Counted from the stretch's first letter, positions 22,565 to 64,000 are shown. The stretch is 64,000 bases of DNA from Asterias rubens (GCF_902459465.1 NC_047076.1:1054001-1118000), one strand, 5' to 3'. A program made the numbers and translations. Notes: generated by a model not told the origin, from the letters alone.

Positions 22565-34510
<11,946 letters not shown>

Positions 34511-35166
34511 TCCCACACCTTGAATTTCGCAGAGACCGTGAACTTGTTGCCACTGGGGCGGATTTCACAAAGAGTTTAGATTGACCTTAACTGTGAATCA
34601 ATCTTGAATGCTTAGCAAAGTGTGATGCCACAATACAAACTACTCTGGTAATACTGACCACTCATCTTAAGATGAATCTTAGTGCTTTGTGAAATCGAGC
34701 CCTGGTCTTGGCCTTGGTGCCCCTGCAAAAGACTTTAAGATTTTCCACTTGAAGTGCCCTTTGCAAAATGAAAATGGCCTTGCCCTACTCAAAGATGAAA
34801 TTCCAGTCCTGTAACACTAACCAAAGCAGATATATTTCACGTTTCACTGTATTTAACTCATCAAACTACAACGGCACATTTTGTTTTATTCTGTTGGGTG
34901 GAGGACTATACTCGTAAACTGTTCATGCTTTACATGGAATCAGGCATACCACCACAATCAGAGTCCAACAGTTTGGGTATTGAGTCTAATTTTCATCATC
35001 TAATTTTTGATTTTGTTTGAGTGAGGAAGGATCCTAAAGGTGTGGTCTGTATCCCTTTTTCTTTTGGAAAGGGAGTTTTAGAGATTCTTTTAATTATTTC
35101 TTTCTGTTCATGAAACCAAAGTACCATCAGAAGCAGCTAGCGTTGCGACTTGAAACTATGTCTAGT

Positions 35167-35406
35167 GGTGCGTTCGATTAGCTTCCCCAGGTCGACCCTG
35201 CGGTGCTCATTCGGGTGAGAACCTGACAAGAGCTAATCAAACGATCACTCGCCCTCTCGTGGTGACATCATGTACCAAGTGACCCGTTCCACAAGCAGAG
35301 CACTTGGGGCTGACCCGGGTGAGTCCCTGGAATGAAGTCAAAGCTATTTGAACGTACCGGGGGCAGACGAACCTGGGTAGACCTGGGAAAGCTTATCGAA
35401 CGCACC
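35167..35406. mobile_element. PIF/Harbinger-like MITE present only in unit 1
   Basis: 27-bp TIRs GGTGCGTTCGATTAGCTTCCCCAGGTC / GACCTGGGAAAGCTTATCGAACGCACC; absent near 58620 in unit 2. Confidence 0.75.
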
Positions 35407-35846
35407 CAGTTTAAAAAAAAAACACCCAGGGGAAAAAAAACACGCAATCAGGTAGGTACTGAAAACCCAATCCACATACAAGGGTTTGGTCTGAAGTGGG
35501 ATTCGAACCAGGGTCCACAGAGTTGAGCAGGGAAAGAAACCACTGAGCCAATCTCAATTTTGGTTACTAGGTAAACAAAGAAGGAATCAGATTTACTTAT
35601 AAGCTGCGTTCTTTAATCATAGCATCAATTTGAGTTAGCATGGAGTACATGTAATTCATAAGCAATTAATCAAAATGGAAGAATTATTCTCGAAAAAATT
35701 AACAATGGAAGTGTTGTTAAATACGGATTCTTGTTATTAAACCAGCAACTGGCTAAACATATCTCATAATACATTGTTTATGAGTCATTTATTTGTGGAG
35801 CCATTTATTAATAAAAATAGTACCAGAGTCTAAGGCCGTCTCCGTA

Positions 35847-35949
35847 ATGGCGACTTCGGCTACAGCTACGGCTAGATCGCCCGCGTCTGCCTATTCTTCC
35901 ACAATGGCAGACGCGCTGATCTAGCCGTAGCTGTAGCCGAAGTCACCAT
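35847..35949. repeat. Palindromic MITE (~45-bp arms, 14-nt loop)
   Basis: ATGGCGACTTCGGCTACAGCTACGGCTAGATC...GGCAGACGCG...GTAGCTGTAGCCGAAGTCACCAT. A more decayed counterpart lies at ~59364-59470. Confidence 0.75.
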
Positions 35950-36302
35950 TTCGCAGTCTGCTACAGTGAAGAGAGAACCAGTAATGATTCTTTAATAGCA
36001 AAATGGCCTTACTCACAAATTACATTTTTGAAAACCAAATACAGAGATCAGTTGTTTTGCCATAAAACAGGATAAAAATGTAAAAGAGGCGGAGATAGGG
36101 CAGGTTATAATCACATCCATACATAGCTTTTAAAATATTAAAACGGAAATTCCCTCAACTCACACCTAGAAATGATCTTATATACGGAACAAAATGTTCA
36201 ATACGCACTCTAATACAAATTTCCTTACAGAGCTTGAACAAAAAGAAAATTTGTTCAAATGAAGGAAATAAACATAATGATTATGTAATTGATAGATAGT
36301 TA

Positions 36303-36516
36303 GGCCCAATTTCATGGCTCTGCTGAATGTAAGCAAAGAATCAGTACTTGCGAAAGCAGGGAATTCTGCGTTTATGTCAAGTGTATTTTGTTTACAGTTA
36401 AGCAGATAATTTTTGCTTGTGCCCTTGCATGCTCCTTGTTACTAGGCAATCTTTGCTGACACAGCTAGCACAGAATTTGCCTTAAAGTCATGAAAGTAGA
36501 GCCATGAAATTGGGCC
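36303..36516. mobile_element. Harbinger-like MITE family E (GGGCCCAATTTCAT ends)
   Basis: GGCCCAATTTCATGGCTCT / AGAGCCATGAAATTGGGCC. Relatives at ~24118-24310, 25515-25745, 33160-33540, 41500-41670, 57250-57310, 58955-59005 and 59808-60045. Confidence 0.75.
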
Positions 36517-38636
36517 CTGTTTAGTTGAAATTTTTACTTAAAGCTTCAATTTGCCGGCAATAGCCATGACATGGTATTTTGTTTAGCAGGCGGCAAATTT
36601 CTGCTTAGCAGTCGCATAAAACAAATTTGAAACAGCTTTATGTAAAAGTAATTGGTACCAGAGTTTTAAAGCTATGATAAACGCAACTAAATGCATTGGT
36701 TGCTATAACTACAAGCATTTAACTCTAGTATTTTGGAAATAACATGTTAAATTTTTACCTTGCTTTTAAAGCAATCACACAACATTGATAAACAGTATTG
36801 TCCAAAGCCCCACACTTCGTGTATCACAACTTAAATATAAAATAAACCTGTGAAAAGTTAGGCTCAATCGGTCATCGGAGTCGGGGAAAAATAACGGGAA
36901 AACCCACCCTTGTTTCCGGACGTTACGCGGTGTCATGACATGTGTTTAAAATAAATCCGTTATTATCAATATCGAGAATTGATAATTGTTTTACTGTTTT
37001 CTCTAAAAGCAAAGCATTTCATGGAATAATATTTCAAGAGAAAGCTTTTTCATACACAATATCAACCTCTACCCTGTTTTCTCAAAAAGTAAAGCATTTC
37101 ATGGAATAACCTTTCAAGGGAAGTCTTTCACCATTACCTTCTGTAAACCCTGTAAGTTATTTGTACATCTGTGAACTTTTAATTTTTGTTCTTTCCAGAA
37201 GTGTCCAATGGCTTTAAGTATTTCATGTCATAACAATGTTAAAAAATTTAAAACAGAATTCATCAATGTTGAACATTGATGAACTCTGTTTTAAATTCGT
37301 TATAATTGAGATCGAATTCCTAAAAACATGAAGATAAAACCATAAAGAAGGCCCCTGATTTCAGAGTAGGGTTTTTAAAACCAAAGATAGATGTACATGT
37401 ATGTAAGAAGGCTTCGTGCTTGCAAGTTTTAACGCTTTGTGCTCACAGTTCAGGTGTTTTTTTGAACAGCCTATTACATCCCTGATTATTCTCCATTGTC
37501 ATGAAGCCAACATCTCTCTATGGGAGACAGACTTTTCAATCTAGCATGGGTCGATGGTCGGCCGTTATATATCGGATTGCTACATCGTGTCTAGTGTGTA
37601 GTTTGGGGTACAGCCAGATACGTGTAACACAAAGCTAGATTCTATAGGGGGGGGGGGCCTACTTGTTTTTTTTTATAATAATAATAGTAGTGGCTTCTTA
37701 TCTAGCAAACATGTCCGTCACTCAACATCCAATATTTTACTGCAAGGTATGTGTGACAACATTTGAATTATGAGACCTACTCCTTTTTACATAGCATCAT
37801 GTAATGGTTTACAAGGTGCTGTGGCGCAATATGCTGCCAATCAAACCAGGAACATAAGGGCGAACCCTTTCTCTGGGTTCTTTTACGTGCGTTACACAAC
37901 ACACTGGACCGACGTCTTTCAACAACTATCTTTCATTTTAAGTAAGTATAAACATTCCTGCATACATTTTTTTAAAGATGAGTTAATACAGTTCCGAGGA
38001 AACTAAATACTAGTTATATATTAAGTACTGGTGTTCTAATTCTCCAATATGCAAACAATTTTAATTGGCTAAATAATACCAACACACTTTCAGACAATAT
38101 TTCAGAACAGTTATAACTGAGCTTCAAGATTCATATAATGAGCTTCAAACATACTATTTATCCTTTTACTTTTGCGCATATAATATAATATTGTTGTATA
38201 ATTTCAGGAAAACTCTACATTTATATCAATCTCGCAGAATTCACCCGTGGCTTTTTGCCTGATTTTGATGATTTTCAGAATGGCTTTACACCTGTTTCAG
38301 AGAGGCGCTCCAGAGTCTCGCCAAATTAAGTTCTGAATTAAGTACATGAAAAGGTTGACGCCTAAAACAGTTTGGAGTGACTGGACAAGCGCCAGGTCAA
38401 AGGAACGACTTTTGCAGTCGTTCAGAACAACTTTGGAGCGCCTTGGTTTCAGACATTGATCTTGCCATGAGCCAAATCTAATGATATGTTTTGTTACGTC
38501 CGTCTGTCTGAAACCAAAATTGATTTTGGTTAGACCTAGAGTCGCACCTAAGCTATTTGGTTCGGCGCGAGTCTGGTGCACCTGTCTGAAATGAGTGTAT
38601 TAACTACGCTTTGGAGCGAGCTTGGCGTTTACTTGA

Positions 38637-41600
38637 TTAATATTGAAAACAACCTCCATGCATCTGTGATAGGTGAGCGTAGCACAGGTCACTTGTATCG
38701 AAGATAGCCAGGCAAAGCCAACATAAGTGCTTCTTACACTCAGAACAGGTCATGTGAAAGCATCCCTCAATTTTCTCGATATAGATTCCACATGGGCACT
38801 TCTTGACATCTTTTCCTTGAATCCACTTCTGAAATGCCACGTCGCTACAGTCCTTGCCATAAGCCTGTAAAAGCAGAGGAAAAAGTGCCATATAGGTGTG
38901 AACAAATTAAACACACACTCCCAAACATATACAGGTACAGCACTCCTATACAATAGAGGACACCTTTTGTACTTTCTGTTGTTCCTGTATTGAAGCAATC
39001 CCTATTGGTTTTGTACACAAATGACTACCGGTAGTGAGGACCCATGAAAACAAAGAACGGACTAGTGAGGACCTATTGCATACACACAGTCGTGTTTGAC
39101 CATTACGTTAGAGGACACCTATTGTGCTTTCTGTTGTTCCTGTATTGAAGCAATCCCTATTGGTTTTTGTACACAAATGACTAGTGAGGACTCATGAAAA
39201 CAAAGAACCGACTAGTGAGGACCTATTGCATACACACAGTCGTGTTTGTCCATTACATTAGAGGACACCTATTGTGCTTTCTGTTGTTCCTGTATTGAAG
39301 CAATCCTTATTGGTTTTGTACACAGATGACTAGTGAGGACCCATGAAAACAAAGAACCGACTAGTGAGGACCTATTGCATACACACAGTCGTGTTTGTCC
39401 ATTACATTAGAGGACACCTATTGTGCTTTCTGTTGTTCCTGTATTGAAGCAATCCTTATTGGTTTTGTACACAGATGACTAGTGAGGACACCTGAAAACA
39501 AAGTACCGACTAGTGAGGACCTATTGTCCCTTTTGTTAAATGTCCTCAGACGATGGGCAATACAAACACACACATACATGTAGCTCTGTGTTGCAGTCGC
39601 CGTGTGGACATTCCTTTAGTTCTGTACACTTAAAGGCGCTGGACACTATTGGTAATTGTCAAAGATTAGCCTTCTCAACATATGCATAAAATTACAAACC
39701 TGTGAAAATTTGAGCTCAACACGTCGTCAAAGTTGCGAGAGAATAATGAAGAAAAAAAAAACCTTGTCACACGAAGTTGTGTGCTTTCAGATGCTTGATT
39801 TCGAGACATTAAATTCTAAACTTGGGGTCTCAAAATCAAGTTCATGGAAAAATACTTCTTTGTCGAAAAATACGTCACTACAGAGGAGCCGTTTCTCACA
39901 AAATTTTATACTATCAACCTCTCCCCATTATTCAATATTTTTTTGTGGTATTTTTTAAAACTTTGGTACAAAGGCTCTTGCTAACTAGCTTTCTTCTCCT
40001 GCCTTGGATTCATTCCTTAGTTTTACTCTATCATAATTTTGTTTTGTTTTTAGAAGTCATCTGACGCTACCGTTACCTTAAATTCCTCGCATGTATATCC
40101 CATATGAGGTTCTGAACCACACGATGAACACAAACGATTCCGACACTCCTGACATGAGAAGACCCCGACATCCTTCGTTGTCTTATAGATCATGTGACAA
40201 TCTGGTGTTGGGCAAAACTTCAGTTTTCCCTCGCTCTTCTGGGTGACATGTGACTCCAGAGCCAGATCAAACAAGCGTCGTCTCTTTGTTTCATCACTGC
40301 AGAGAACACGGAAGTCGCAGAGCAACATTGGGAGGCCACATCCATCACATGGACACTCTGAAGAGATAAAGTTCAAAACATGGTCAGTAAATACGGTTCA
40401 TCTTTCTTAAAGGAACATTATATAATTGGTTTTTGCTAACAAAAAGCACCATGTAGTTGTTTACAGGGTGCTGTGGTGCAATATGAGGAACCCCTTCTCT
40501 TTAGGATAAGGGTTTTGGGTTCTTATACAAGCATTAGTCAACACACGATACCAACAGCTTTACGTCCCATCCCTCTGTTACAACACTGTTGATGGTTGTT
40601 TCATGAGATGTGTTTTGCTTTGACTAAAACAAACAAAATGTCATGAACAAAATAATTATTGTTAAGATATTTTATTTTACCAATGGGGTAATCCTTGCTA
40701 GCGTTCTGTAACCTGACGGTAAACATCTCATGAAGGCATTGAAGATGGAACCCATGGGAGCAAGCACTCAGACGATACATCTCCTCAGTGGCTTCCACTG
40801 CTGTGTAACAAATGCCGCATTCCACTTCAGTGGTTGCATCATCTCCTCCAACTCTGAAATAAAAGGAAAACAATGTTGATGTTCTGCAAGGGTTTTCATG
40901 CCAGTTTAAAGCACTGCAGCCGGTTTCGCGAAATGCTAGGATTAATCCTATCTCTAACCCGTCCTAACTTAGGTGGGTTCAATGCGTCCTGACGTCCATA
41001 GAAGTGGAACTTAACTCGTCCTGAGTCCTAAGATTAATCCTAATGTTAGGAAGAGTTTGGTGAAATCGACGGCTGGACACGTAATTGTCAAAGACCAGTA
41101 TTTCTCGTTTGGTGTATCCCAACATATGCATAAAATATCAAATCTGTGAAAATTTGGGCCCAATTGGTTATCAAACTGCAAGAAAAAATGAAAGAAAAAA
41201 CACCCTTGTTGCACAAATTTGTATGCTTTCAGATGTCTTGATCTAGCAACTAGGATGTGTGCGCTAAATAAGAACCAATGATTATTTTCTCCTCACCTGA
41301 TGGCAGCTTGTTGTCCAGCTTCTTGGAGGCAGTTTCTCACCATCTTGTGGACGTTATCAAAGACATTCTGATTGCCCTCTATAAGAAGGTTTCCTTGGCA
41401 CATGTTCAATGTTATAGCTTTGGCTCCAGTTTCTTCAACAAGTTTCTGTCAAAAAGGAAGAAAAAAGAGAATGATAAATCCTCACATCTGGGCCCAACCA
41501 CTGCCCAAAACAATTCTGCTAAGCGGAAATGAGCAGGATACCAGTCACAAAATGTACATGAGACATGGTAGTTTGGCTGATAACCTTATTTTGGTGAGCA

Positions 41601-44600
41601 AAAAGTTTTTTACGCTTAGCTACTATTTCTGCTTTATTATAAGCAGCTCTATGAAATTGGGGTCAGGGCAAAAGCACTAAATTTTGGCGTCATCAATGTT
41701 TGTGTGTACAACATCAGGGTTAGTTTCAAGAAGATTTGCAGTTCAAAAATCAGGTTACACCTTTGCACTTTTGGGACACACAAATTTTCTTTTACACATT
41801 ATTACAACAATTATTACACTGTCAATCTGTCATTGACTTTCTGCAACATTATTTTAGCTCTGAAAACCTGACCATAACATGACTGTGTTTTATTCTGACG
41901 GATCTTCTGCAAATATTATAGCTATATTTAGTCCATAGTAAGATTTCAAAGAGGGGAAAATGAAATAAATGTTTGTGATGCAACAAAGTAACTTTTCCAT
42001 CAGCAACAACAATGGACATTATTTTTGGCTTTATACAAAATATAATTCCACTAGTCCATAGTAGAAACTATTGACCAACTACTCACCTTAAGCCAAGGTC
42101 CATAAGCTTTCACTAATGCCCTTACAGCTCTCCCTTTAGTACAACCTTCAGAGAGACCTGCAGTCAATGAAATTTCTTTCAGTTGATTCTTACAGATGAT
42201 GTTGATGTAGTTCTTCACTTGCTCCTTCAAGACTTCTCTGACCTCATCCTTTCCGTAAATCACAATGAGATGGCGACGGGTGTCCACCATTGCGTGAGCC
42301 TCCAACCCGTAAGTAAGATGTCTGGGAAATGAGGTATAGAAAAAAAAGTAAGACTGTATTTTGTTTTACCTACACAGTTAAAGCCATTGGACCCTTTTGG
42401 TAAACAGTATTGTCCAAGGCCCATACTTTGTGTATCACAACTTCTATATAAAATAACACACCTGTGAAAATTTAGGCTTAATCGATCATCGGAGTCGGGA
42501 GAAAATAACGGGAAAACCCACCCTTGTATCCGCACGTTTCGCCGTGTCATGACATGTGTTTAAAATAAATCCGTAATTCTCGATATCCGGAATTGATATT
42601 GTTTTACTGTTTTCTCAAAAAGCAAAGCATTTCATGTAATAATATTTCAAGAGAAGTCTTTCACCACTACCTTCTGTAAACCCTGTAAGTTATTTGTAAA
42701 TCTGTGAATTTTTTATTTTTTTCTGTACCGAAAGGTTCCATTGGCTTTAAGCGAGCGTTCACTAACTATAGTTTGTATAGCGCAATCTTTACAATAATAG
42801 TGCCCTGGTCATTGGGCCAACAACATTTCCTTTAATCTTTCTCATCTCCCTGAGGAGTATACAGCCCGAGCTGTCATGCGCTCAGAAGGCTTTTTCATAC
42901 ACAATATCAACCTCTACCCTAGCGGGTACCCATTTATACCCCTGGGTGAAGAGAGGCCATTTTAGGATCTTGCTCAAGGACACGCGTATCACGAACTGGA
43001 TTTGAACCCATGCCCCAACGACTTAACCACCGACTTAAATTTGACGTTTGTTTATTGAGACAGAATGCTTGGGAATCATAAATACCAATTATTAAAGTGG
43101 AGCTAATCGGACAAAAACAGAATGTGGAACAAACTCCCAACTCAGTGAAGACATGCGGGACTGTTGATAATTTCAAGACCAAATTGAAAACTCATCCTAC
43201 AATAATAATATAACAATATTGAAGTCTTATAAAGCGCACGTGTCTACCAAACAAGGTACTCAAGGCGCTGAGTATATACAAACTTTCAGAAACTTACCTC
43301 AAGCCATTCTTGTGAAGTAACTTCAGAATGTGATATTTGATCTGAAATGAAACCTCCTCCTCGCACAGATCATTTAGTGATACCGTCTCGCCCCGGATGT
43401 AAGACAGAAGTTCTCGGCGTGTCCTATGAACTTCTTGGATGTTTTCACCAGCGACGTTTATCACCCAGTCATTTGTCTTCTTGCTCTTACTCACTCTGAC
43501 ATTCAAATTTCTGACTCCTTCGCTCACCTCCTCAACGAGCTTTGTGATTCTTTGCTCAATGCACTTGTAGACGTCAGGATTACAGAAGAGCATGCAAGAT
43601 GCCGTAAGCTTCACAATATAAATCTGGCCTGCCGAGTTGCGTGGAGGGTTGTCTTGAATATTCAGAATACAACCATCTACTTCATCTTCGTTGTCACACT
43701 CAAAGTTGGCGATAGCCTTCCTGCTTTGTGTTTTCTCCGATCGCGCCGACAGTATGTTGATGTCTAGTTGATCTTCTCGTAGTGTGCCTTCGAACATTTT
43801 GTAGATGTCTTGAGTGACCTGGTCGTCTTTGATAAGAATTGCTGGGGGTTGACGAGCAATACTGCATTTGACTTTTTTGCAGTCTGTATAATCTTCAATA
43901 GCTTCTTCCAGTTCTTCATTGGTTGCATCTGTGTGAACGTTTCGGAGGTACAGAGCTCTTGTGTTATTCTTTTTAAGTTGGCACTCCAATAGCTTCCCTT
44001 TGAAGTCAAAATTTTGCAAGCTTTCTTTCATTTCTAAGGCTTGGTTTGATGTGTCAAAGTTGATAAATGCTTGGCCTTTTGACGGCCAGGTGTACCATAT
44101 GACCACGATCCTTGAGCTGACTCTAGCGATATCTCTGTTTTGAAAACTACGTCCCAGAATTGGTTCGAGCTGAAGGGTGTCCTCTACTTCTAGCAGCATC
44201 TTTGTTTCCTCCGCTGTCTTGGGGGAACTGAAGGTAATGCGACCCCACTTGGCTGTAGTTTGCTTTTGAAACTTGTACACGTCAAGAATCTCATTCTGAG
44301 TGCAACAAGAAGAGAGACAAATCATCTTCAAATCATCTTCGGACATGTCTCCTGTAACATTACTGACCTCCAGGCTTCTGTAATCATTTGGCATCAAGAT
44401 GAATTTTGTCTGACCTCCTGCTACGACGACTTGACGGACAACTCCTGATTCCCCTACTGGCACTTCAATCTGTTCTCTCTGGATAGACTCCAGCTCTTCT
44501 TTGAGGAGTCTCTCAACATACGATGTTGCAAACTCGCAAATGTTCATCTTCACGAACATCTGCAACTTTTTTGTGGCTCTGTTGACCTGGATAATGCAAG

Positions 44601-47600
44601 GAGAACCTTTCACTTCTGTGATATACTCTTCCATAGCCCGGACCTTTTCATTTCTCTTTATGGTAAGACGTCTCATCACAGCAGTTCCAAGTTGGATCGC
44701 AGGAGCCTCTTGCAAAGCCATTTCTTGAAGTGCGCCCACATCAATCTCGTCATAAAACATCGGAGCAACTTCCTGAAGCCAATCGATGTTAACTCGAGTC
44801 ACATTGAAGAGGAAGCTTCGGGATGTTTGTTTGAACTCTTCATACACTACCCATTTAGGATTGCAGTCTAGTGCAACGAGAGACGAAGATGGATGGATGA
44901 ACCCGGATTTCTGATGAGGAAGAACCGTGTAACCTGCTCTTGGATGACCGTTGTATAAACTCAACGTCTGAAAGTAAGCTGACATGATGATCTTTTGAAG
45001 TGACTCAGTCTTTGCCGCATCAATGGCTTCCATCTTGTAGTCCCTTGCATTACACTCGATGTTATGTTTAAGCTTTAACACCTGGGCTGCTTCGTTAGCA
45101 GACTCTCGAACAGCTCTCAGCGTCTTGGAATTCATGCTGTTCTCCATACACCACGCCTTCTGCTTAGCCGCTGCTTTGCTATTCCAAGATCCGTAAGCTT
45201 TAAGCATTGTTATAACATCTCCACTGTCATGACAATACTTGAGCTTCAGACGGTCTGCTTTCTCTTTGTCTTTATCGGAGCCTCCTCTATAGAACAAACT
45301 TCCAGGAGCAGAGATCAAGGCAGCGATGATGACAGCTTCAGAGGTAAGATGTTTCTCTACTCCTTCAAGAATAACCTTTGAGAGACGTGGCTCCATTGGA
45401 AATGTTGCCATCTTACGACCCAAAGAGGTCAACTTATTAGCTGCATCCACGGCACCCAGCAACCTCAGGGTAGTCATAGCCTGCTGTGTAGCTTCTCGAT
45501 CAGGCGCCTGGATGAAATCAAAGTTCGCCACGTCTTCGACACCAAGCTCTAAAAGCTGCAGTGCTGCCATCCCGAGGTGAACACGCAAAATCTCCGGTTT
45601 CATCATTTCATTCAGGTCCTTATACTCTTCTTTGGTGTACAATCGATAGCAAACACCTGGGCCTGTCCTACCTGCTCGGCCCGCCCGTTGCTGAGCTGAC
45701 GCTTGAGTTATCGCTGTCACCTTCAAAAGACTCATGCTACGCTTTGGATCATATTGACACTCTTTGACAACGCCAGTGTCAATGACATATCGGATACCTT
45801 TAATAGTCACTGAGGTCTCAGCGACATTGGTTGCAAAGATTATCTTCCTTTGTCCAGCTTTTGCGTCTGCGAATACTTTCATCTGGTCTTCTGGCTGGAG
45901 TCGTCCATGAAGGGGTAGTATCAGTGCCTCTTTATCTTGGTCATCAGGTCTTTGGCCGAGGGAAGTTGATAAGTCTCGACATGCTTGTTCAATCTCATTG
46001 GCCGATGTCAAGAAGACTAGAATGTCACCTTCCTTCTCATCTCGATGCACCTGCAGAATTTAAGAAGAAAAACAAAAATCCTTTTTTAATATAAAATAGA
46101 TTTAAAATTTGCATTGGGGATGAAGAATATTAACTTAGAGAGGTTTGTGGGAACACCATGTGAAGTTTCTTTTGAGTAGTGTTGGTTCTGTAAAGAACTG
46201 GTGGTTAAAAAATTTCAGAACATACACAACTCTTGAGAGATTTACTCATGGTGTTATCGCAAATCTCTCTTAGTTATACAGTGTATTTCTACCATGCAAA
46301 GGTTCTAGTTCTACTTATAACAAGTATGTAGGGTCCGTATGCATGATTAAATGTAACTAGCATATTTCATGAAAAAAGGGCTTATTGTTTGAAACATTTT
46401 ATCATTTTAGAAGAGAACAAAAACTTTTTGTGGGAAACAATTATCATCTGAACTTTGAAAACAATTATGGACTTATCGGGTACATTTTGTTTTGCCCTTC
46501 GTTCGAGATCAAATGTACAGAATCAAAGTCATGAAAGTGACGCTAGGAGTGAGATTAGTCTGTGCATTAGAGCTTTATCATACTGCCATCTTGGTCATCC
46601 TCCCTGTATCCTAACAGCAGTAATAGGTGCTATTGTTTATTGTACAAAAAGGAACCAGACTATTTTTCCATATGGCCTCGGTTTGGTTACATTGATTTCA
46701 ATGGAAGAAAATCAAGATGGCTGCACCATGATAAAGGTCTAGATACTAGGGAAAGCCCTGTTCACACTTCCTGTGAATGCAATACAAATGTTGTCGTCAC
46801 AGCGAATAATTCGCATGTTGACTTGTGCTCAACTCCTGCAAAACATTCGCTGCGAAAATAGCCCTGTGACATCAAAATTCTAATCGTATTTACATTGGCA
46901 GGATATATGAACCGGCTTAAGCGGGGAAACCAAACACTATGGGTTTCTCACCTTTGCAGTCTGTTTGACGGCTTTCCCAACATAGTCACCCTCTCCGATG
47001 CTGACATCATCACCAATCCATCGTTTATCCACCGGAAATGTCCGACCAGGAACCTTTATCTCTTTACACTCATCGAGGTAGTTGGAGAATAAGGTGGTGT
47101 CGATTGTGGCAGACATTATGAGAAGGTGAAGATCTTTTCTGCTTCGAAGGAGTTTCTTCAGCGTTGCCAACAATATATCCGTGTCTACAGATCTCTCATG
47201 GGCCTCGTCGACGATGACGCAAGTATAGTCGGACAGATTTGGGTCGGCGATGATCAAGTTGAGGAGTTTCCGATCCGTCATGAAAGTAACAACTGTTTTG
47301 GCACTGACAGATTTCTTGTTGCCGACAAAATATCCAACTTCTTCGCTAACCTGGCATCCGTATTCTTCAGCGACACGTTTTGAAAGAGTGAGTGCCGCAA
47401 CTCTTCTAGGTTGTGTGCAAACTACCCGCCATTGTGGTCTCTGGCTGGAGCCTTCATCTTCCTGACTCTCCAGGGCCATGTCTACGAGATACTGTGGAAT
47501 CTGTGTGCTCTTTCCAGATCCTGTCTCGCCTTGCAAGACAACAGCTTTATTCCATCGCATAGCTTCCTCAATCCTAGACCTGTAGCCATAAACCGGTAGA

Positions 47601-50600
47601 GGGGAATCCAAACGACGACATTCTCTCAGAAATTGATGACGAATCTTGTGTACCTCTGACAAGGTTTGGGTTTCTGACTCTAAACCTTCCAAAGCGGTTT
47701 CAATATTAAGGCATGCGTTGTTGAACTCATCCAGGAATCTTTGTTTCTCCTCCAAATGGTGCTCATGTGTTTCGATAGAAATTTTATATCGGTGAATTTC
47801 AGCAAAGGACAGGTTTTCTTTGAAGGCGTCTCTGCAATCTGACAAATCCGAGTTGATGACTTTACATTCTTCTGTAATTTTATAGTTAATGTCATGGACT
47901 TTCTCTGGCATTTCTCTTTCTTTTAAGTCCTTCAGTACTTTTTTTGCAATGTGTGGTTCCACTTCTTCATTGTGCCAGGAGAGGACAGGTTTTATACAAT
48001 GGCCAGAGATTGGTTTCCCATAAAGCTTACAAACTGCCTCCATCGCATCTTCCCGTCTCTTAAACTTCAGAGAGCATCTCCCGGAGGCCAACACTGCGTC
48101 AACAAATCCATGACATTCCTCTCTCACAAGATATACAACATCACTCTCTGAGATGTTTCTTGGGAGATCTGTTAAGACAACTTCATTCGGACTTCTTTCC
48201 TGTGTATTATCTTTGTCTGTGCATGGTTTATATTTTGACCTTACAAGCCCGCCAGTTGTTCCCTTATCACCGTCATTTGATTCATCAGTTTTGTCACCAC
48301 TCCTCAACTGAGACCTTACATCTCCTACAGAGCTACCTTTCCCTCTATGACCACGCCCATTTCTACCTTGACCACGCCCACCTTTCTGTTCTTGCTCCCT
48401 TTCTGTGTGACGATATCCCCTTTGACTCTCCTCTTTCAAATCTTTAGTTTGTTGGGCGTCCTCAAGCCATCTCTCAACATTTACCCGACCCTCATCAGGA
48501 CCGTGACCAAGTTGTTCAACATGAAGAGACAGGCCGGACTTCTTGTTTCGGTAAGACTCTTTTGATACTGGGAAACTGGCTTTAATTGGAGTGTCATTCC
48601 CAAGACGCCACAGGTCATTGTTCAAAACACCGAAAGCTGCTGTTGCCATCTTGAGATCTGGAAACTGAAGAACAGCAAATTGGTTGTTGTGTTTTTGGGA
48701 AGGTTTCAACCCCGAGCACTGACAGTTTAAATCAAGGGACTCCAGAAAGTCATAGAATTCCGCAAGATCGAAATTCTCTCCAATATTTGTTACCCAGAGA
48801 GATGAAGACTGTTTGACTTGAGAGGAACTGGCATGACTCACCACAGTAGAGCAGATGCTCCTCACTTCACTACATTCTGATTGATTATCAGAATCTTCTC
48901 CCATTTTCTGTCGCCAGTTTCTTGTCCTCCTTCCACGGCCTCTACCTCCAAGACCTCTCCCTCCACGGCTTCTCCCTCTACGGCTGCTCTCTCCTCGATT
49001 TCTACATCCTCGACCTCTGTAGCCTTGACCCCTCCCTTCATGACTTCCTCGAGTTGCCCCTTCAGGGTATCCAGTTGCTTCAAAGGAAGGGGGATGCAAA
49101 TCTCCACTGGGGCTCGCCATAGCTTTTCGATGACTGTAGCTTACGCACATTTCAGGGCCACCCCGAAAAATCCAGCGGTTATGCAGAAAACTTTGAGCCA
49201 TATTTGTGTCCGTGACAGATGCAAAATGGATAATAGCAAATCGCCTCCCTGATTTGGAAATAAAAAAGTCTACATCTGAGAATGATATCTTTTTGTCGGA
49301 CAAGAAACGACAAAATCCATCATTGCTCACTCCGTCATCGATGTTTTTCACATGTAATGAGATTGGCTGTGATGATGTACCACTCCTCTCACTCATTCCT
49401 GATGCAATGCTGCTCTGGTCATCATCTCTATCATAAGGAATATTTGGAGCAAGAGGCATCGACATCAATGAGGGGATGTTCTTTTCAGAAGCTTGGGGCT
49501 GTCTAGGTGCCCCGATTGGATGCTGGCTTTGGTCAGCCCTCAGTTGAACATCTTGCTCAGAATGTGTCAGGCTGGGCCGGCGGTCACCTGTTGTATAACC
49601 ACCTCTTTCGTGTCCTTGATATTTGCCTCGCCCAGAGGAATCACCACAGCCAGTCTGTGAAGATTGAGGGTCATATGCCATGTATGGATCCTGGCGCGAG
49701 GGTCCGGGATGATTATCTGGCGTGTAACCACCTCTATGGTGTCCTCGATAGTTTCCTCGATAGTTTCCTCGCCCAGAGGAATTACCCCGGCCAGTCTGTG
49801 AAGTTTGATGGTCATATGCCATGTCCAAAGGTCGGTGGCGGTCATCTGGTGTGTAACCACCTCTCGGGTAACCTCGATAGTTTCCTCGCCCAGAGGAATT
49901 ACCCTGGCCAGTCTGTGAAGATCGATGGTCAACTGCCATGTCTGAAGGTCGGTGGTGGTCATCTGGTGTGTAAGCACCTCTAGGGTGACCTCGATAGTTT
50001 CCTCGCCCAGAGGAATTACCCCGGCCAGTCTGTGAAGATTGATGGTCATATGCCATGTCCGAAGGTCGGTGGCGGTCATCTGGTGTGTAACCAGATCTAG
50101 GGTGTCCTCGATAGTTTCCTCGCCCAGAGGAATTACCCCGGCCAGTCTGTGAAGATCGATGGTCAACTGCCATGTCCGAAGGTCGGTGGCGGTCATCTGG
50201 TGTGTAACCACCTCTCGGGTGACCTCGATAGTTTCCTCGCCCAGAGGAATTACCCCGGCCAGTCTGTGAAGATCGATGGTCAACTGCCATGTCCGAAGGT
50301 CGGTGGCGGTCATCTGGTGTGTAAGCACCTCTAGGGTGACCTCGATAGTTTCCTCGCCCAGAGGAATTACCGCGGCCAGTCTGTGAAGATTGATGGTCAT
50401 ATGCCATGTCTGAAGGTCGGTGGCGGTCATCTGGTGTGTAACCAAATCTAGGGTGTCCTCGATAGTTTCCTCGCCCAGAGGAATTACCCCGGCCAGTCTG
50501 TGAAGATCGATGGTCAACTGCCATGTCTGAAGGTCGGTGGCGGTCATCTGGTGTGTATCCATCTCTAGGGTGACCTTGATAGTTTCCTCGGTCAGAAGAT

Positions 50601-51739
50601 GGATGCTGGTCACTTTCTTGATGAGAATATTGGTCATGATTACGGTGACCTTGTTGATGTCTCTGGCGTTGGTCATATGAAGGAGACTGACCATCAGGAT
50701 GAACCTTGTTCTGGTGTGGATTGTTTCCATGAACAGCTGAGGATGTTTTTCCATTTTTGTTTTGTCTGGGACGACGCGATCTTTGGTCTTGTAAAAAAGC
50801 TGACAGTTTCCTGTCAGATGCTCCGATTGAGCAATTATTGAGAATCCCCTGTGCTGCAGCAGCATCTTCTTGATTTTTAAACAGAATGCTAGCTTGGCTG
50901 TTCTGTGAATCCTTCATCGACCAGTCTATATTTTGATAATTTGTGACGTTTAAGCAGCCCAGAAAAGTTTTGAATGAGTCTTGGTCAGTGCATATATTTT
51001 TCACCTGTACTTGTAACTTCAATCTCGTTGATGTTGTTTGTCTTGCAGCATTGGAAGATGAATCTTGCATCACCTTCATCGCAGCTGAAACATTTGTCTT
51101 TCCCATGCTTCCCTCTCTGTCTTCTTTGGGTAAATCTTTACCCAGACCACCTCCCCCAACTTCCTCCTCCTCCTCCTCCTCCTCCCCCTCCTCCTCATCT
51201 GCATCGGTCTCTTCTTCACTACTTGTTTCCTCCGAGGACTCAATAGAGTCACTGAACACCATCAGATCATCTTCTCCCATATTATCACAATCAGAAGATG
51301 AAATGATTGGAAAATGTTCCCTTGAAGCCATCATTAACTGTGTTGTATCACTGCTAGAATCTGCAATTAGAAGAGAGAAAAAAACAGAGCAAAAATTAGT
51401 AAATTACTAATTGCATGGCAATTATTAGCTATTATTAATAATTCTGCTACACAAGATCTGTTGCACATTTTTAAGTTACATTTTTGTTTCATAGGATGGG
51501 GATATGGTTTTAAAAGTTTGTTGGTACATCAACAATGGATGGTGTGAGATATAGCTACCCTTTTTACACTATCTACTTTTGATCCGCAGAAAATAGCAAA
51601 TAGGTATGTGGGAGGGGGGAGGGGGTGGGGGGGGTGGGGGAAGGTGGGCGCAAGGAGGGCAAGGGTTATGCCATGTTGCATCACTATATAGCCTTGGTTA
51701 ATGATAGTCTTGGTTAATGATACTCTTACCTTTCTTCAT
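38637..51739 (-). CDS. Multi-RRM / RG-repeat / DEAH-box RNA helicase / RBR E3 ubiquitin ligase fusion (plant DEAH11/DEAH12-like), copy 1, ~2,740 aa
   Basis: Exons 51739-51730 (probable MKKD start; alternative ATG at 51334), 51360-46952, 46050-43298, 42321-42087, 41445-41297, 40853-40681, 40357-40077 and 38864-38637 sum to 8238 nt with consistent phases. GETGSGKST, TQPRRVAA, DEAH, SAT, ATNVAETS, QRAGRAGR, HA2-like and OB-like regions, RING1 (CGIC...CSHGFHLQC), IBR (CPTPDC...CQEC...CSSC...H...C) and RING2 with catalytic GCFH. Confidence 0.92.
38955..39527. repeat. Minisatellite, ~3.8 units of 149-155 bp, in the last intron of helicase-RBR copy 1
   Basis: AGAGGACAC unit starts at 38955, 39110, 39260 and 39409. 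Each unit contains GACTAGTGAGGAC twice. Confidence 0.9.
42378..42750. mobile_element. MITE family B copy (inverted)
   Basis: TTAAAGCCATTGGAC...CCATTGGCTTTAA; reverse complement of 1230-1603. Confidence 0.85.
42885..43275. mobile_element. SINE (tRNA head with central-domain-like body, - strand) followed by an L2 LINE 3' remnant
   Basis: Minus strand GGGTTCAAATCC...GTGTCCTTGAGCAAG...CACCCAGGGGTATAAATGGGTACCC, with the same body at 28825-28880. WNKL...FKTKLKTH at 43125-43200. The (AAT)n-led tail is shared with 10790-10850. Confidence 0.6.
49600..50590 (-). repeat. Coding tandem repeat, ~8 units of 117 bp (39 aa), in the helicase-RBR N-terminus
   Basis: GATAG anchor at 49759, 49876, 49993, 50110, 50227, 50344, 50461 and 50578 (exact 117-nt period). 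Unit DDRHRPSDMAVDHRSSQTGRGNSSGRGNYRGHPRGGYTP. Confidence 0.97.
51610..51665 (+). other. Putative G-quadruplex motif in the first coding intron of the helicase-RBR gene
   Basis: More than four G3+ tracts with short loops: GGGAGGGGGGAGGGGGTGGGGGGGGTGGGGGAAGGTGGG. Confidence 0.55.
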
Positions 51740-55613: not shown

Positions 55614-55927
55614 TTAAAGACCCTGGACACTTTTGGTTTGAGCTCAATTGGTCGTCGAAGTTGCAAGATAATAATGGAAGAAAAAACACATTGTCACCAA
55701 TGTTGTGTGCTTTCAGATGCTCGATTTCGAGACCTCAAATTCTAAATCTAAGGTCCCAAAATCAAAGTCGCTGAAAATTACTTCTTTCTCGAAAACTACG
55801 TCACTTCAGAGGGAGCCATTTCTCACAATGTTGTATACTATCAACCTCTACCCATCACTTGTTACCAAGTTAGGTTTTATGCTAATAATTATTTTGAGTA
55901 AGTACCAATAGTGTCCATTGCCTTTAA
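55614..55927. mobile_element. MITE family A copy (internally deleted), next to a tRNA-SINE at 55455-55575
   Basis: TTAAAGACCCTGGACAC...ACCAATAGTGTCCATTGCCTTTAA. Confidence 0.8.
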
Positions 55928-61172: not shown

Positions 61173-63974
61173 TTAAAAAAAACCACCATGCTTCTCTGAT
61201 AGGTGATCGTAGCACATTTTGCTTCTATCAAAGAATTCCAGGCAATGCCAACAGATGTGCTTCTTACATTCACGACACTTTATGTGAAAACATCCTCCAT
61301 TTTTCTCGATAGGGATTCCACAGTTTGGTACTGGACACCTCTTGACATCTTTTCTTTTAATCCATTTCTCAAATGCCAAGTCGTCAAAGTTCTTGCCGGA
61401 AGCCTGCAAGAGGAAAAAAGTGGCACGGGCATAAAAACACAAACACACACCCGAAACGCAAACACTGTTGCACACACAGCTGTGGGGACGAAATGTTTAG
61501 GCTTTGCGTGTTTTGTACTTTCAAATTTTACCGACTTAAATTAAATTTCTTTTAAAGATTTTGCTTTTTTTTTTTCTATAAATATTTTTTTAATATTTCA
61601 GCTAGTGTTTTACAATTTTCTTTCCTGAAGGTACCAAGTTGACGGAGAAAAACCTCGTGTGGACCATTGATCCATTGTGTAAATGTCCCCACAGCTAAGT
61701 ATATGCCATAGCCATACATGTAGCTGCAGCTGCTAAAGTATTTGTTGATCAAATTATCACAAATACAGTTGAGCGGACTCGACACTGCTGAATATTTTAT
61801 GAAGGATTTGGGCACTTTTTGTAGCACAAAACATAATGTCCACAGATTTACGCTAAACTTACACGGTTTGAAGATAATGATGGAAGAAAGCATACCTTAA
61901 AATATTACCTGCTGAGGTGCTGCATTTTTGGGGGAAATGAGTAAAAAAGTGTCACAAAAATACATTATACATGCTAAAATAATTTTCATCTCCTGAGACA
62001 AAAACTATTTTTTTTGACTTGTTTGATGTAAATCTGTGGACATTGTGTTTTGTGTCTTACAAAAAGTACCCGACTCTTTAATCAGAAACATATTATACAA
62101 GTGTTTGTTTCATTTCATTTTGTGTTTTTAGTTTTGGAGGAGCCAGTTCTCAATTCTTAAGCATGGCAGGTACACCTCTGTGTGAAATACAAAATATGTA
62201 CACATTCAATATTTTTTCACGGCATTGATCTGAAACAACGACTCTTGCTTGCTCGTTTTTTCTCCTGCCTTTGATACTGGTCTTGTTAATGTTTAGTTTA
62301 ACTCAACCACATTATTTTGTTTCCAGAAGTCATCTGTCGCTACCGTTACCTTAAACTCCACGCATGTATATCCCATATGAGGTTCTGAACCACACGAAGA
62401 ACACAAACGGTTCCGACACTCCGGACATAAGAAGACCCCGGCATCCTTTGTCGTCTTATAGATCATGTGACAATCAGGTGTTGGGCAAAACTTCAGTTTT
62501 CCCTCGCTCTTCTGGGTGACATGTGACTCCAGGGCCAGATCGAACAAGCGTCGTCTCTTTGTTTCATCGCTGCAGAGAACACGGAAATCGCAGAGCAACA
62601 TTGGGAGGCCACATCCTTCGCATGGACACTCTGAAGTTTAAAACATAGTCAGTAAGAAATACCATTCATCTTTCTTGTCTACCAATTACTGGACAGAGGG
62701 TAGCTTCTCATTTGTCCACAATGTGATTTGAATTGTCATTGAGCTCGGCGAGATATTAATAATAATAATAATTATCAAATAATAAACCACAAGGGAAACT
62801 GACTGGGTACATTTTTTAAACGATAATAATTATATAAATTTATACCACGCTTTATGCTACGTTTCTAAGCGCATGGTGCTGGTGTCCTTGAAGACTATAG
62901 TAAACCAGGGCAACAGCACCAAATATAAAGAACATTATATTAATACTAGGTTATAGCACTTTATCCCACCCTAGGAGTGTATCAAAGCGTTCAGTATTTT
63001 TTCCTGCAAAGTATGTGGAGCTACATTTTGAAGTATGAGACCTTTTCCTTTAAAGCACCATGTAATTGTTTACAGGGTGCTGTGGTGCAATATGAGGAAC
63101 CCCTTCTCTTTAGGATAAGGGTTCTGGGTTCTTATACAAGCATTACTCAACACACGACACCAACGGCTTTAAGTCCTGTCCCTCTGTCTGTCCCTCTGTT
63201 ACAGCACTGTTGATGGTTGTTTGAGGATATGACACTTAGCTTTGACTCAAACAAAATGTCATGAACCAAATAATTATCGTTAAGATATTGTGTTTTACCA
63301 ATGGGGTAATCCTTGCTAGCGTTCTGTAACCTGACGGTAAACATCTCATGAAGGCATTGAAGATGGAACCCATGGGAGCAAGCACTCAGACGATACACCT
63401 CCTCAGTGGCTTCCACTGCTGTGTAACAAATGCCGCATTCCACTTCAGTGGTTGCATCATCTCCTCCAACTCTGAAATAAAAGGAAAACAATGTTGATGT
63501 TCTGCAAGGGTTTTCATGTCTGTTATTAAAAGCACTGCAGCCGATTTCACGAAACGTTAGGATTAATCCTATCTCAAGTTAGAACAAGTAACCCGTCCTA
63601 ACATAGGATGGGTTCAATGCGTCCTAACGTCTTCAGATACAGAACTTAACTCATCCTAATGTCCTAAGATTAATCCTAATGTTAGGAAGAGTTTGCTGAA
63701 ATCGACGGCTGGAGAAATTTTGGCTCAATCAGTAATCGAAGTTGCAAGAAAACTCTTTGCACAAACTTGTGTACTTCTACAAGGATGTGTGCGCTAAATA
63801 AGAACCAATGATTATCTTTCCTCACCTGATGGCAGCTTGTTGTCCAGCCTCTTGGAGGCAGTTTCTCACCATCTTATGGGCGTTATCAAAGACGTTCTGA
63901 TCGCCCTCTATGAGAAGGTTACCTTGGCGCATGTTCAGTGTTATTGCTTCGGCTCCAGTTTCTTCAACAAGTTT
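61173..63974 (-). CDS. DEAH helicase-RBR E3 ligase, copy 2, last four exons (5' part beyond the window)
   Basis: Exons 63974-63826, 63471-63299 (RING1), 62630-62350 (IBR) and 61403-61173 (RING2, CPVPNC...EKNGGCFHIKC). Open frames, intact GT-AG sites and the same phases as copy 1. Confidence 0.9.
61805..62080. mobile_element. MITE family F copy, present only in unit 2
   Basis: CAAAACATAATGTCCACAGATTTA / TAAATCTGTGGACATTGTGTTTTG; related to 9575-9990. Confidence 0.7.
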
Positions 63975-64000
63975 CTGTCAAAAAGGAAAAAAAAAGAGAA

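What the first reader, a model, noticed from the sequence alone, without database searches (positions are those of the whole stretch)
38637..51739. Giant RNA-binding DEAH helicase-RBR ubiquitin ligase: candidate invertebrate RNA sensor-effector
Seen: one polypeptide of ~2,740 aa with an acidic N-terminus, four RRM-like folds interleaved with RG-rich disordered tracts, a complete DEAH helicase (all motifs intact), HA2/OB-like regions, further RRM/KH-like segments, and RING1-IBR-RING2 with the catalytic Cys-x-His. Known: the helicase-RBR fusion matches Arabidopsis DEAH11/DEAH12, and I know no vertebrate ortholog. RRM/KH-plus-E3 and NTPase-plus-E3 designs occur in the antiviral proteins DTX3L/PARP14, ZNFX1 and RNF213. 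Inference: an RNA-activated E3 ligase acting in innate antiviral defence or RNP quality control, with a ~1,200-aa N-terminal extension that looks lineage-specific. Local duplication and fast RING2 evolution support an immune role. RRM/KH calls are by eye.
Basis: partly seen in the sequence, partly recalled or inferred. Interest (0 to 1): 0.85.

Follow-up and report, generated by a model that had tools for sequence, protein, structure and literature searches.

The report
Sea-star DEAH12-like helicase-RBR ligase gene

Summary
A seven-exon, GT-AG-spliced gene on the minus strand (38637-51334) encodes 2,733 aa. In order it has:
- an acidic N-terminus
- four predicted RRM folds separated by disordered RG-rich tracts
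- a DEAH helicase with motifs I-VI intact
- HA2 and OB domains
- a folded array of RRM/KH-like modules
- RING1-IBR-RING2 with the catalytic Cys-x-His

It is not a new kind of protein. It belongs to the 'Helicase/Plant I' RBR subfamily, described by Marin in plants and animals, with repeated losses in animal lineages. Its ortholog in Acanthaster planci is already named 'DEAH12, chloroplastic-like' (57-62% identity, and it carries matches to all four RRM modules). Relatives occur in brittle stars, crinoids, amphioxus, cnidarians, placozoans, molluscs, an annelid and spiders. Members of 2,600 aa or more exist in an oyster and a sea slug.

The helicase-core tree follows the echinoderm class relationships, which suggests vertical inheritance. 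The local duplication is real: a tandem segmental copy about 23 kb away. The RING2 exon diverges faster than its neighbours, but its dN/dS is 0.59, silent and non-coding divergence there is also higher, and both copies keep every conserved zinc and catalytic residue.

The immune reading is untested and unsupported here. RNA-coupled ubiquitination of RNP proteins is the best inference. What looks specific to this lineage is an eight-copy 39-aa RG-rich repeat.

The parts
46952..51334 (-). Coding exon A (aa 1-1461): start ATG, acidic N-terminus, four RRM folds, RG-rich tracts, helicase RecA1
   Evidence: An ORF of 1,465 aa. Donor AAG|GTGAGA. Gene model.
50786..51016 (-). RRM-like module 1 (aa 107-183)
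   Evidence: AF2 gives pLDDT about 95 and beta-alpha-beta-beta-alpha-beta topology. The nearest protein-language-model clusters include RRM_1 families, at scores of 0.89-0.90, so this is a lead only. There is no Pfam hit. It matches Acanthaster P0001 residues 210-287.
49755..50590 (-). Coding tandem repeat: 117 bp x 7.1 copies at 93% identity. At protein level it is eight 39-aa RG-rich units, about aa 277-605.
   Evidence: Tandem Repeats Finder. Units listed. AF2 predicts it disordered. No counterpart in Acanthaster.
49133..49363 (-). RRM-like module 2 (aa 658-734)
   Evidence: AF2 pLDDT above 90 with RRM topology. Atlas features score 0.93 to RRM_1 clusters. Matches P0001 residues 410-489, and also that protein's module 3.
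48575..48802 (-). RRM-like module 3 (aa 845-920)
   Evidence: AF2 model. Weak Pfam RRM_1 hit, E 0.026. Matches P0001 residues 578-650.
47981..48184 (-). RRM module 4 (aa 1051-1118), next to the helicase
   Evidence: Pfam RRM_1. AF2 model. Shared with Acanthaster, Amphiura and Anneissia homologs.
47096..47554 (-). Helicase RecA1 with motifs I (GETGSGKS), Ia, Ib, II (DEAH) and III (SAT)
   Evidence: Pfam DEAD, E 2.7e-10. Motif positions.
43298..46050 (-). Coding exon B (aa 1462-2378): RecA2, HA2, OB and the connector array
   Evidence: An ORF of 918 aa. Acceptor CAG|GTG and donor AG|GTAAGT.
45661..46038 (-). Helicase RecA2 with motifs IV, V and VI
   Evidence: Pfam Helicase_C, E 1.1e-14. Motifs. 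The nearest solved structures are DHX8/Prp22, Prp43/DHX15 and DHX16.
44761..45480 (-). HA2 winged-helix and ratchet domains plus the OB fold
   Evidence: Pfam HA2_N, HA2_C and OB_NTP_bind, all above their cut-offs.
43300..44763 (-). Family-specific connector of RRM/KH-like alpha/beta modules (aa 1891-2378)
   Evidence: Pfam RBD_DEAH11 (30.4 bits against a cut-off of 28.4), RRM_1, and a weak RRM_DEAH11 hit. AF2 pLDDT 88.5. The best structural matches are Arabidopsis DEAH12 and DEAH11.
42087..42321 (-). Coding exon C (aa 2379-2457), carrying part of the KH_DEAH11 domain
   Evidence: Pfam KH_DEAH11, E 4.7e-4, on the exon fragment. Splice sites.
41297..41445 (-). Coding exon C2 (aa 2458-2506)
   Evidence: tblastn with Acanthaster P0001 residues 2157-2208. 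Splice sites and reading phase.
40681..40853 (-). Coding exon D: RING1 (C-x2-C ... C-x-H-x2-H-x2-C)
   Evidence: Pfam zf-RING_11 and zf-RING_2. Sequence.
40077..40357 (-). Coding exon E: end of RING1 plus the IBR
   Evidence: Pfam IBR, E 3.3e-11.
38637..38864 (-). Coding exon F: RING2, the family-specific CY-x-HL...HGG tail and the stop codon. The catalytic Cys2693 is at 38760-38762.
   Evidence: Pfam IBR_1 and IBR. Family alignment. Motif positions.
61176..64000 (-). 3' end (exons C2, D, E, F) of a tandem paralogue. The rest of that gene lies beyond the window.
   Evidence: tblastn. Intact exons and splice sites. Collinear blastn matches at an offset of about 22.3-23.5 kb.

Best explanation
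The locus is an intact sea-star member of the ancient 'Helicase/Plant I' subfamily of RBR ubiquitin ligases, whose named members are Arabidopsis DEAH11 and DEAH12. It is the ortholog of the Acanthaster planci gene annotated 'ATP-dependent RNA helicase DEAH12, chloroplastic-like'.

Shown here:
- the gene model
- every domain
- intact catalytic motifs in both enzymes
- family membership
- inheritance that tracks the echinoderm class relationships
- a ~23-kb tandem duplicate

Inferred mechanism, from what is established for DEAH/RHA helicases and RBR ligases:
1. The four N-terminal RRM folds and the RGG/RG tracts bring the protein to RNA or to RNP particles.
2. The DEAH core, closest to Prp22/DHX8 and Prp43/DHX15, binds single-stranded RNA and pulls along it 3'-to-5' using ATP.
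3. The rigid RRM/KH-like connector places the C-terminal RBR near that RNA.
4. The RBR takes ubiquitin from an E2 onto Cys2693 and passes it to proteins sitting on the RNA, or to itself.

On this reading the protein would mark or remodel RNP complexes. A general RNA-metabolism or RNP quality-control role seems more likely than a dedicated antiviral one.
For: **Gene and domains**
- Gene model with seven GT-AG exons and an open 2,733-aa frame.
- Pfam domains in the order DEAD, Helicase_C, HA2, OB, RBD_DEAH11, RRM, KH_DEAH11, RING, IBR, IBR.
- Helicase motifs I-VI and the RBR catalytic Cys-x-His are intact.

**Family membership**
- The best homolog is Acanthaster 'DEAH12-like', 2,438 aa, 57-62% identical.
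- In the hit lists the same architecture (helicase plus IBR and KH_DEAH11 Pfam domains) appears in brittle stars, crinoids, amphioxus, Nematostella, Trichoplax, molluscs, an annelid and spiders.
- The helicase core forms a clade with SH-aLRT 100, apart from DHX8, DHX16, Prp2 and DEAH5. Inside it echinoderms are monophyletic (96) and branch by class.
- The connector model matches Arabidopsis DEAH12 and DEAH11 at E 3.5e-27 and 9e-26, far ahead of anything else in Swiss-Prot.

**RNA-binding parts**
- The N-terminal modules fold as RRMs and match multi-RRM structures.

**Constraint**
- Purifying selection between the tandem copies: dN/dS 0.14 over 199 codons.
Against: - No biochemical or genetic data exist for any animal member. 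The only functional paper found concerns cotton DEAH12 restraining a NAC transcription factor, and in the passages that mention DEAH12 it says nothing about helicase or E3 chemistry.
- Coupling between the helicase and the ligase is inferred from the fusion alone.
- The RNP1/RNP2 aromatic residues are only partly kept in modules 2 and 3, and are degenerate in modules 1 and 4 (read directly from the sequence). Some of these RRM folds may therefore bind protein rather than RNA.
- RING2 starts with C-x-C instead of the usual C-x2-C. Crinoid members also have C-x-C, so it is probably tolerated.
- Expression was not examined.
Confidence: 0.85

Rival explanations
1. One reading: an invertebrate antiviral sensor-effector. 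Viral or aberrant RNA engages the RRMs and helicase, and this releases RBR autoinhibition. Ubiquitin is then placed on viral RNPs or on signalling partners, by analogy with ZNFX1, RNF213 and DTX3L/PARP14.
For: - The architecture joins RNA binding, an NTPase and an E3.
- A tandem duplicate exists, and its RING2 exon has a nine-fold higher dN than the neighbouring exons.
- N-terminal accessory modules differ by lineage: RRMs here, and a NYN domain (PF01936) in spiders.
- More than one family member is listed for Littorina, Amphiura and Antedon.
- The N-terminal RRM/KH-like region of PARP14 appears among the weak structural matches of the connector (rank 23).
Against: - The family predates the plant-animal split, and the helicase-core tree follows the echinoderm class relationships (PMC2904391).
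- dN/dS is below 1 everywhere it was measured.
- The RING2 stretch also shows higher dS (0.34 against 0.16) and lower non-coding identity (about 80% against 86-93%). Part of its divergence is therefore regional, for example less gene conversion.
- All conserved residues are kept in both copies.
- The neighbours are P450 and Fringe-like glycosyltransferase genes, not an immune cluster.
- There is no literature link to immunity.
- The protein is not homologous to ZNFX1 (an SF1 helicase) or RNF213 (AAA+).
Confidence: 0.1
2. The helicase and the ligase act on separate targets. On this view the protein is a regulator of specific proteins such as transcription factors, as reported for cotton DEAH12, and the RNA-binding parts serve only for localisation, for example to RG-driven condensates.
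For: - Cotton GbDEAH12 interacts with and restrains GbNAC072 (PMC13407882).
- The RNP motifs are degenerate in two of the four N-terminal RRM folds (direct reading).
- Long RGG/RG tracts are predicted to be disordered.
Against: - The helicase-connector-RBR order is conserved from plants to animals, and the helicase motifs are intact. This argues that the two activities are used together.
- In the passages mentioning DEAH12, the cotton study does not address the chemistry.
Confidence: 0.2
3. One of the two tandem copies is redundant and drifting towards loss. The faster RING2 change would then reflect relaxed constraint rather than adaptation.
For: - RING2 dN/dS is 0.59, against 0.14 for the three exons upstream of it.
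- The first zinc knuckle of the focal copy is shortened to C-x-C.
- The recent 39-aa repeat expansion suggests tolerance of change.
Against: - The focal gene has a fully open 8.2-kb frame with canonical splice sites.
- The visible exons of the paralogue are also intact.
- Both copies keep every family-conserved zinc ligand and the catalytic Cys-His.
- Against the outgroups the focal copy has fewer unique RING2 changes than the paralogue, 3 against 9.
- C-x-C also occurs in crinoid members.
Confidence: 0.1

Closest known systems
Arabidopsis DEAH11 / DEAH12 and the 'Helicase/Plant I' RBR subfamily (Marin; PMC2904391)
   Same: The order of parts is the same: DEAH helicase, HA2, OB, a connector carrying the RBD_DEAH11, RRM_DEAH11 and KH_DEAH11 domains, then C-terminal RING1-IBR-RING2. 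The connector fold matches at E 3.5e-27 with a TM-score by query of 0.52.
   Different: About 950 residues longer. The extra length is an N-terminal extension of an acidic tract, four RRM folds and RG-rich disorder that includes an eight-copy 39-aa repeat. Sequence identity in the connector is only 15-16%.
Acanthaster planci 'ATP-dependent RNA helicase DEAH12, chloroplastic-like' (P0001, 2,438 aa)
   Same: Ortholog: 74% identical in the helicase core and 57-62% over the two large exons. It has the same C-terminal exons and matching counterparts of all four N-terminal RRM modules.
   Different: It lacks the 39-aa repeat array. By eye it has one more RRM-like stretch near its N-terminus. Its RING2 knuckle is CPVPNC, as in the window's paralogue, where the focal copy has CPC.
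Spliceosomal DEAH helicases DHX8/Prp22, DHX15/Prp43 and DHX16/Prp2
   Same: These are the closest solved structures for RecA2, HA2 and OB, with E down to 2.7e-86. All helicase motifs are shared.
   Different: They form a separate clade with SH-aLRT 100. They have no RBR and no DEAH11-type connector. Their N-terminal parts differ: an S1 domain in DHX8 against RRMs here.
NTPase-plus-E3 immune proteins ZNFX1, RNF213 and DTX3L/PARP14 (an analogy from my own knowledge)
   Same: The design idea is the same: nucleic-acid or NTP-driven machinery joined to a ubiquitin ligase. The PARP14 N-terminal RRM/KH-like region is a weak structural match to the connector (rank 23, E 8e-7).
   Different: Neither enzymatic part is homologous: this is an SF2 DEAH helicase and an RBR ligase. 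Nothing here shows induction or an antiviral role.

Membership tests
Helicase/Plant I RBR subfamily (DEAH11/DEAH12-like) | DEAH/RHA helicase core with motifs I-VI, followed by HA2 and OB domains | tested here: met
   Pfam DEAD, Helicase_C, HA2_N, HA2_C and OB_NTP_bind all pass their cut-offs. The motifs are located at aa 1269-1582. PDB matches to DHX8, Prp43 and DHX16.
Helicase/Plant I RBR subfamily (DEAH11/DEAH12-like) | The helicase core groups with family members rather than with other DEAH helicases | tested here: met
   The family clade has SH-aLRT 100, apart from DHX8, DHX16, Prp2 and DEAH5. The focal gene pairs with Acanthaster at 100 (quick IQ-TREE search, no bootstrap). One row that I had labelled as outgroup (Amphiura 'DHX15-like', 582 aa) fell inside the family and is probably a fragment of a member.
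Helicase/Plant I RBR subfamily (DEAH11/DEAH12-like) | Family-specific connector (RBD_DEAH11, RRM_DEAH11, KH_DEAH11) between the OB fold and the RBR | tested here: met
   RBD_DEAH11 scores 30.4 bits against a cut-off of 28.4. RRM_DEAH11 (17.5 bits) and KH_DEAH11 (20.2 bits, on an exon fragment) fall below their cut-offs. The AF2 model has pLDDT 88.5 and best matches Arabidopsis DEAH12 and DEAH11 at E 3.5e-27 and 9e-26.
Helicase/Plant I RBR subfamily (DEAH11/DEAH12-like) | C-terminal RING1-IBR-RING2 with the catalytic cysteine in RING2 | tested here: met
   Pfam RING and IBR hits on exons D, E and F. GC(2693)FH aligns with the invariant G-C column of 45 family members. All zinc ligands are kept except that the first knuckle is C-x-C.
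Helicase/Plant I RBR subfamily (DEAH11/DEAH12-like) | ATPase/helicase activity and E2-dependent ubiquitin transfer | not testable with these tools
   This needs purified protein.
RRM (RNA recognition motif) domains, N-terminal modules 1-4 | beta-alpha-beta-beta-alpha-beta fold | tested here: met
   AF2 gives four modules with pLDDT above 90 and this topology. The top Foldseek PDB matches are all multi-RRM proteins, with E down to 3.7e-9. These are predicted structures built from a shallow 7-row alignment.
RRM (RNA recognition motif) domains, N-terminal modules 1-4 | Sequence match to Pfam RRM_1 at its cut-off of 20.7 bits | tested here: inconclusive
   Whole exon A scores 30.8 bits. Taken alone, module 4 scores 18.9 and module 3 scores 14.9, and modules 1 and 2 give no hit. 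Language-model neighbours of modules 1 and 2 include or are led by RRM_1 clusters, at scores of 0.89-0.93.
RRM (RNA recognition motif) domains, N-terminal modules 1-4 | RNP1/RNP2 aromatic residues that contact RNA | tested here: inconclusive
   Read directly from the sequence. Module 3 has LWVTNI and QFAVLQF, and module 2 has RRFAIIHF. Modules 1 and 4 lack the aromatic residues. RNA binding itself was not tested.
NTPase-E3 innate immune effectors (ZNFX1 / RNF213 type) | Homology of the NTPase and E3 modules | tested here: not met
   Pfam and PDB place the NTPase among SF2 DEAH helicases and the E3 among RBRs. That ZNFX1 carries an SF1 helicase and RNF213 AAA+ and RZ-finger modules is my own knowledge.
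NTPase-E3 innate immune effectors (ZNFX1 / RNF213 type) | Signature of an arms race (dN/dS above 1) | tested here: not met
   Between the tandem copies, dN/dS is 0.14 for exons C2-E and 0.59 for the RING2 exon. Only 272 codons and a single pair were compared, so this is a weak test.
NTPase-E3 innate immune effectors (ZNFX1 / RNF213 type) | Induction by infection, or an antiviral phenotype | not testable with these tools
   No expression data are available here. No paper in the library links DEAH12-like genes to immunity.

The most novel reading that the evidence does not exclude
The animal helicase-RBR proteins are RNA-gated ubiquitin ligases. When the DEAH core and the flanking RRM/KH modules engage particular RNAs (viral, transposon-derived or stalled), RBR autoinhibition is released and the bound RNP is ubiquitinated. 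In sea stars, the four-RRM and RGG extension and the tandem duplicate with a diverged RING2 surface would then tune target or E2 choice for defence. This would be an invertebrate counterpart of ZNFX1 or RNF213 that vertebrates have lost.
Probability: 0.1. Interest if true: 0.75.

Novelty: new member of a known kind. Interest (0 to 1): 0.3.

Why it matters
The helicase-RBR subfamily is one of only three RBR subfamilies shared by plants and animals. I found no biochemical study of any member, and no functional study at all for an animal one. A clean, full-length gene model with mapped domains, the catalytic residues named and a paralogue for comparison gives a concrete starting point for asking whether an RNA helicase can direct a ubiquitin ligase to RNP targets. 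As a discovery it is modest: the family, its architecture and its patchy animal distribution are already published, and its Pfam domains already exist.

Tried and rejected
- **Missing exon.** I first joined exon C directly to the RING1 exon. The reading phase did not fit. The Acanthaster protein then revealed the missing 149-nt exon C2.
- **Defective RING2.** I suspected that the C-x-C knuckle marked a defective RING2. I dropped this because crinoid members have C-K-C and every other ligand is kept.
- **RING2 as evidence of selection.** I considered the RING2 divergence as evidence of positive selection. I dropped this because dN/dS is 0.59, and dS and the non-coding divergence are also higher in that stretch.
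- **Pfam on RRM modules 1 and 2.** Scanned alone, they gave nothing, so structure prediction was needed.
- **The window's own annotated protein.** I could not retrieve it.
- **Earlier notes.** A search of the scan's notes near this place found nothing.
- **Failed call.** One literature query failed on a term that was too short.

Full report
**What is there**

The window is eukaryotic DNA of about 36-48% G+C. On the minus strand, two very long open frames lie one after the other: 51334-46937 (1,465 aa) and 46050-43294 (918 aa). Four short frames follow that encode RING1, IBR and RING2 sequences.

Reading the junctions gave canonical splice sites. The reading phase between the exon after the second long frame and the RING1 exon did not fit. 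The Acanthaster homolog then revealed one more 149-nt exon.

The final model has seven coding exons, all introns GT-AG, an 8,202-nt CDS and 2,733 aa with a single terminal stop. The upper bound, 51739, is about 400 nt beyond the first ATG. In-frame stops lie upstream of that ATG and I saw no coding signal there.

**Domains**

Pfam finds the following, in order along the protein:
- DEAD (RecA1) and one clear RRM_1 in the first exon
- Helicase_C, HA2_N, HA2_C, OB_NTP_bind, RBD_DEAH11, RRM_1 and a weak RRM_DEAH11 in the second exon
- part of KH_DEAH11 in the third exon
- RING-H2-type fingers, IBR and IBR/IBR_1 in the last three exons

Helicase motifs I (GETGSGKS), Ia, Ib, II (DEAH), III (SAT), IV, V and VI (QRAGRAGR) are all present. 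RING2 carries GC(2693)FH at the invariant catalytic position of a 45-member family alignment.

The first RING2 zinc knuckle is C-P-C rather than the usual C-P-x-C. The window's paralogue and Acanthaster have C-PVPN-C, and crinoid members have C-K-C, so this position varies naturally.

**The by-eye RRM calls**

Pfam supports only the fourth N-terminal module, and weakly the third. AlphaFold2 on aa 90-1130, with a shallow alignment, gave four modules with pLDDT above 90, each beta-alpha-beta-beta-alpha-beta. They lie at aa 107-183, 658-734, 845-920 and 1051-1118, and everything between them is below 50.

The best PDB matches are all multi-RRM proteins: Prp24, raver1, HuD/HuR, PABP, Sxl, nucleolin and SFPQ/NONO. 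Language-model neighbours of modules 1 and 2 include, and for module 2 are led by, RRM_1 clusters.

The RNA-contacting aromatic residues are only partly kept in modules 2 and 3, and are absent in modules 1 and 4 (direct reading).

The tracts between the modules are rich in G and R. One tract is a recent coding tandem repeat, 117 bp x 7.1 copies at 93% identity, which gives eight 39-aa units.

**The connector**

The 488 residues after the OB fold were modelled with a 42-row alignment and gave pLDDT 88.5. They form a compact series of alpha/beta modules.

Against Swiss-Prot models the best matches are Arabidopsis DEAH12 (E 3.5e-27, TM-score by query 0.52) and DEAH11 (E 9e-26). The next entries, at about 2e-8, are multi-KH and multi-RRM proteins such as Bicaudal C, vigilin, IGF2BP, PABP and nucleolin. 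The PARP14 N-terminal region is at rank 23. No solved structure covers this region.

**Relatives**

- The best homolog is Acanthaster planci 'ATP-dependent RNA helicase DEAH12, chloroplastic-like', 2,438 aa and 57-62% identical.
- The hit lists show the same helicase-plus-RBR Pfam content in Amphiura, Antedon, Anneissia, Branchiostoma, Nematostella, Trichoplax, many molluscs, an annelid and spiders, where a NYN domain is added.
- No vertebrate or insect appears among the named hits.
- More than 100 clusters (at 50% identity) align across nearly the whole second exon.
- Members of 2,627 aa (Ostrea) and 2,662 aa (Elysia) exist.

A tree of the helicase core separates the family from DHX8, DHX16, Prp2 and DEAH5 with SH-aLRT 100. 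Echinoderms are monophyletic (96) and branch by class, and the focal gene pairs with Acanthaster (100; 74% identity). This was a quick search without bootstraps.

**Literature**

Marin's work names this the 'Helicase' or 'Plant I' RBR subfamily. It is one of three RBR subfamilies shared by unikonts and bikonts, and it has been lost several times in animal lineages (PMC2904391; PMC3087547).

DEAH12 has been used as a nuclear marker in clams (PMC8765752). Cotton DEAH12 restrains a NAC transcription factor (PMC13407882). No paper in the library links the family to immunity.

**The N-terminal extension**

Acanthaster carries counterparts of all four RRM modules. Module 4 is also found in brittle-star and crinoid proteins. 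The 39-aa repeat array has no counterpart in Acanthaster. The extension is therefore at least asteroid-wide, and only the repeat array looks recent.

**The duplication**

A second copy of exons C2, D, E and F lies at 61176-64000 on the same strand, with intact splice sites. Collinear DNA matches run from 34204-41471 to 57657-64000 at an offset of 22.3-23.5 kb. They include non-coding DNA and are 78-98% identical.

Between the two copies:

| Exons | Codons | dS | dN | dN/dS |
|---|---|---|---|---|
| C2 + D + E | 199 | 0.158 | 0.022 | 0.14 |
| F (RING2) | 73 | 0.335 | 0.199 | 0.59 |

DNA identity, non-coding included, falls from 93% near exon C2 to about 80% around exon F. Part of the RING2 divergence is therefore regional.

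Both copies keep every family-conserved residue. Against the outgroups the focal copy has fewer unique changes than the paralogue, 3 against 9. Part of that count is affected by a local misalignment of the paralogue's first knuckle.

**Surroundings**

The rest of the window holds two tandem cytochrome P450 genes, two Fringe-like glycosyltransferase frames and dispersed repeats. This is not an immune gene cluster.

**Verdict**

The thing observed is a new member of a known, named family.

The most likely function is RNA-coupled ubiquitination of RNP proteins. This is inferred from what is established for DEAH/RHA helicases and RBR ligases, and it has not been shown for this family. The antiviral reading is not excluded, but no evidence gathered here supports it.

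Noticed in passing
window 34204-41471 and 57657-64000: A tandem segmental duplication with an offset of about 22.3-23.5 kb. It copies the helicase-RBR gene together with about 4.4 kb of downstream non-coding DNA. Identity varies from 78% to 98% along it, which may reflect patchy gene conversion.
   Followed up: partly
window 38949-39526: A 149-bp tandem repeat, 3.8 copies at 94% identity, inside the intron between the IBR and RING2 exons. The corresponding stretch gave no blastn match to the paralogue.
   Followed up: no
window 5404-8377 and 12199-15545 (minus strand): Two neighbouring cytochrome P450 genes in tandem, seen as exon-sized ORFs with strong Pfam p450 hits.
   Followed up: no
window 16965-17729 and 20257-20949 (minus strand): Two ORFs with Fringe-like and galactosyltransferase Pfam hits, apparently another tandem pair.
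   Followed up: no
window 55637-55927, 319-617, 10253-10557, 39709-39928: A dispersed repeat of about 300 bp at 83-85% identity, in both orientations. One copy lies inside the intron between the IBR and RING2 exons. It is probably a transposable-element fragment.
   Followed up: no
proteins P0053, P0057, P0059, P0067, P0078 (spider homologs): Spider members of the family carry a NYN domain (PF01936), where echinoderm members carry RRMs. The accessory RNA-handling module differs by lineage.
   Followed up: no
   Followed up: no
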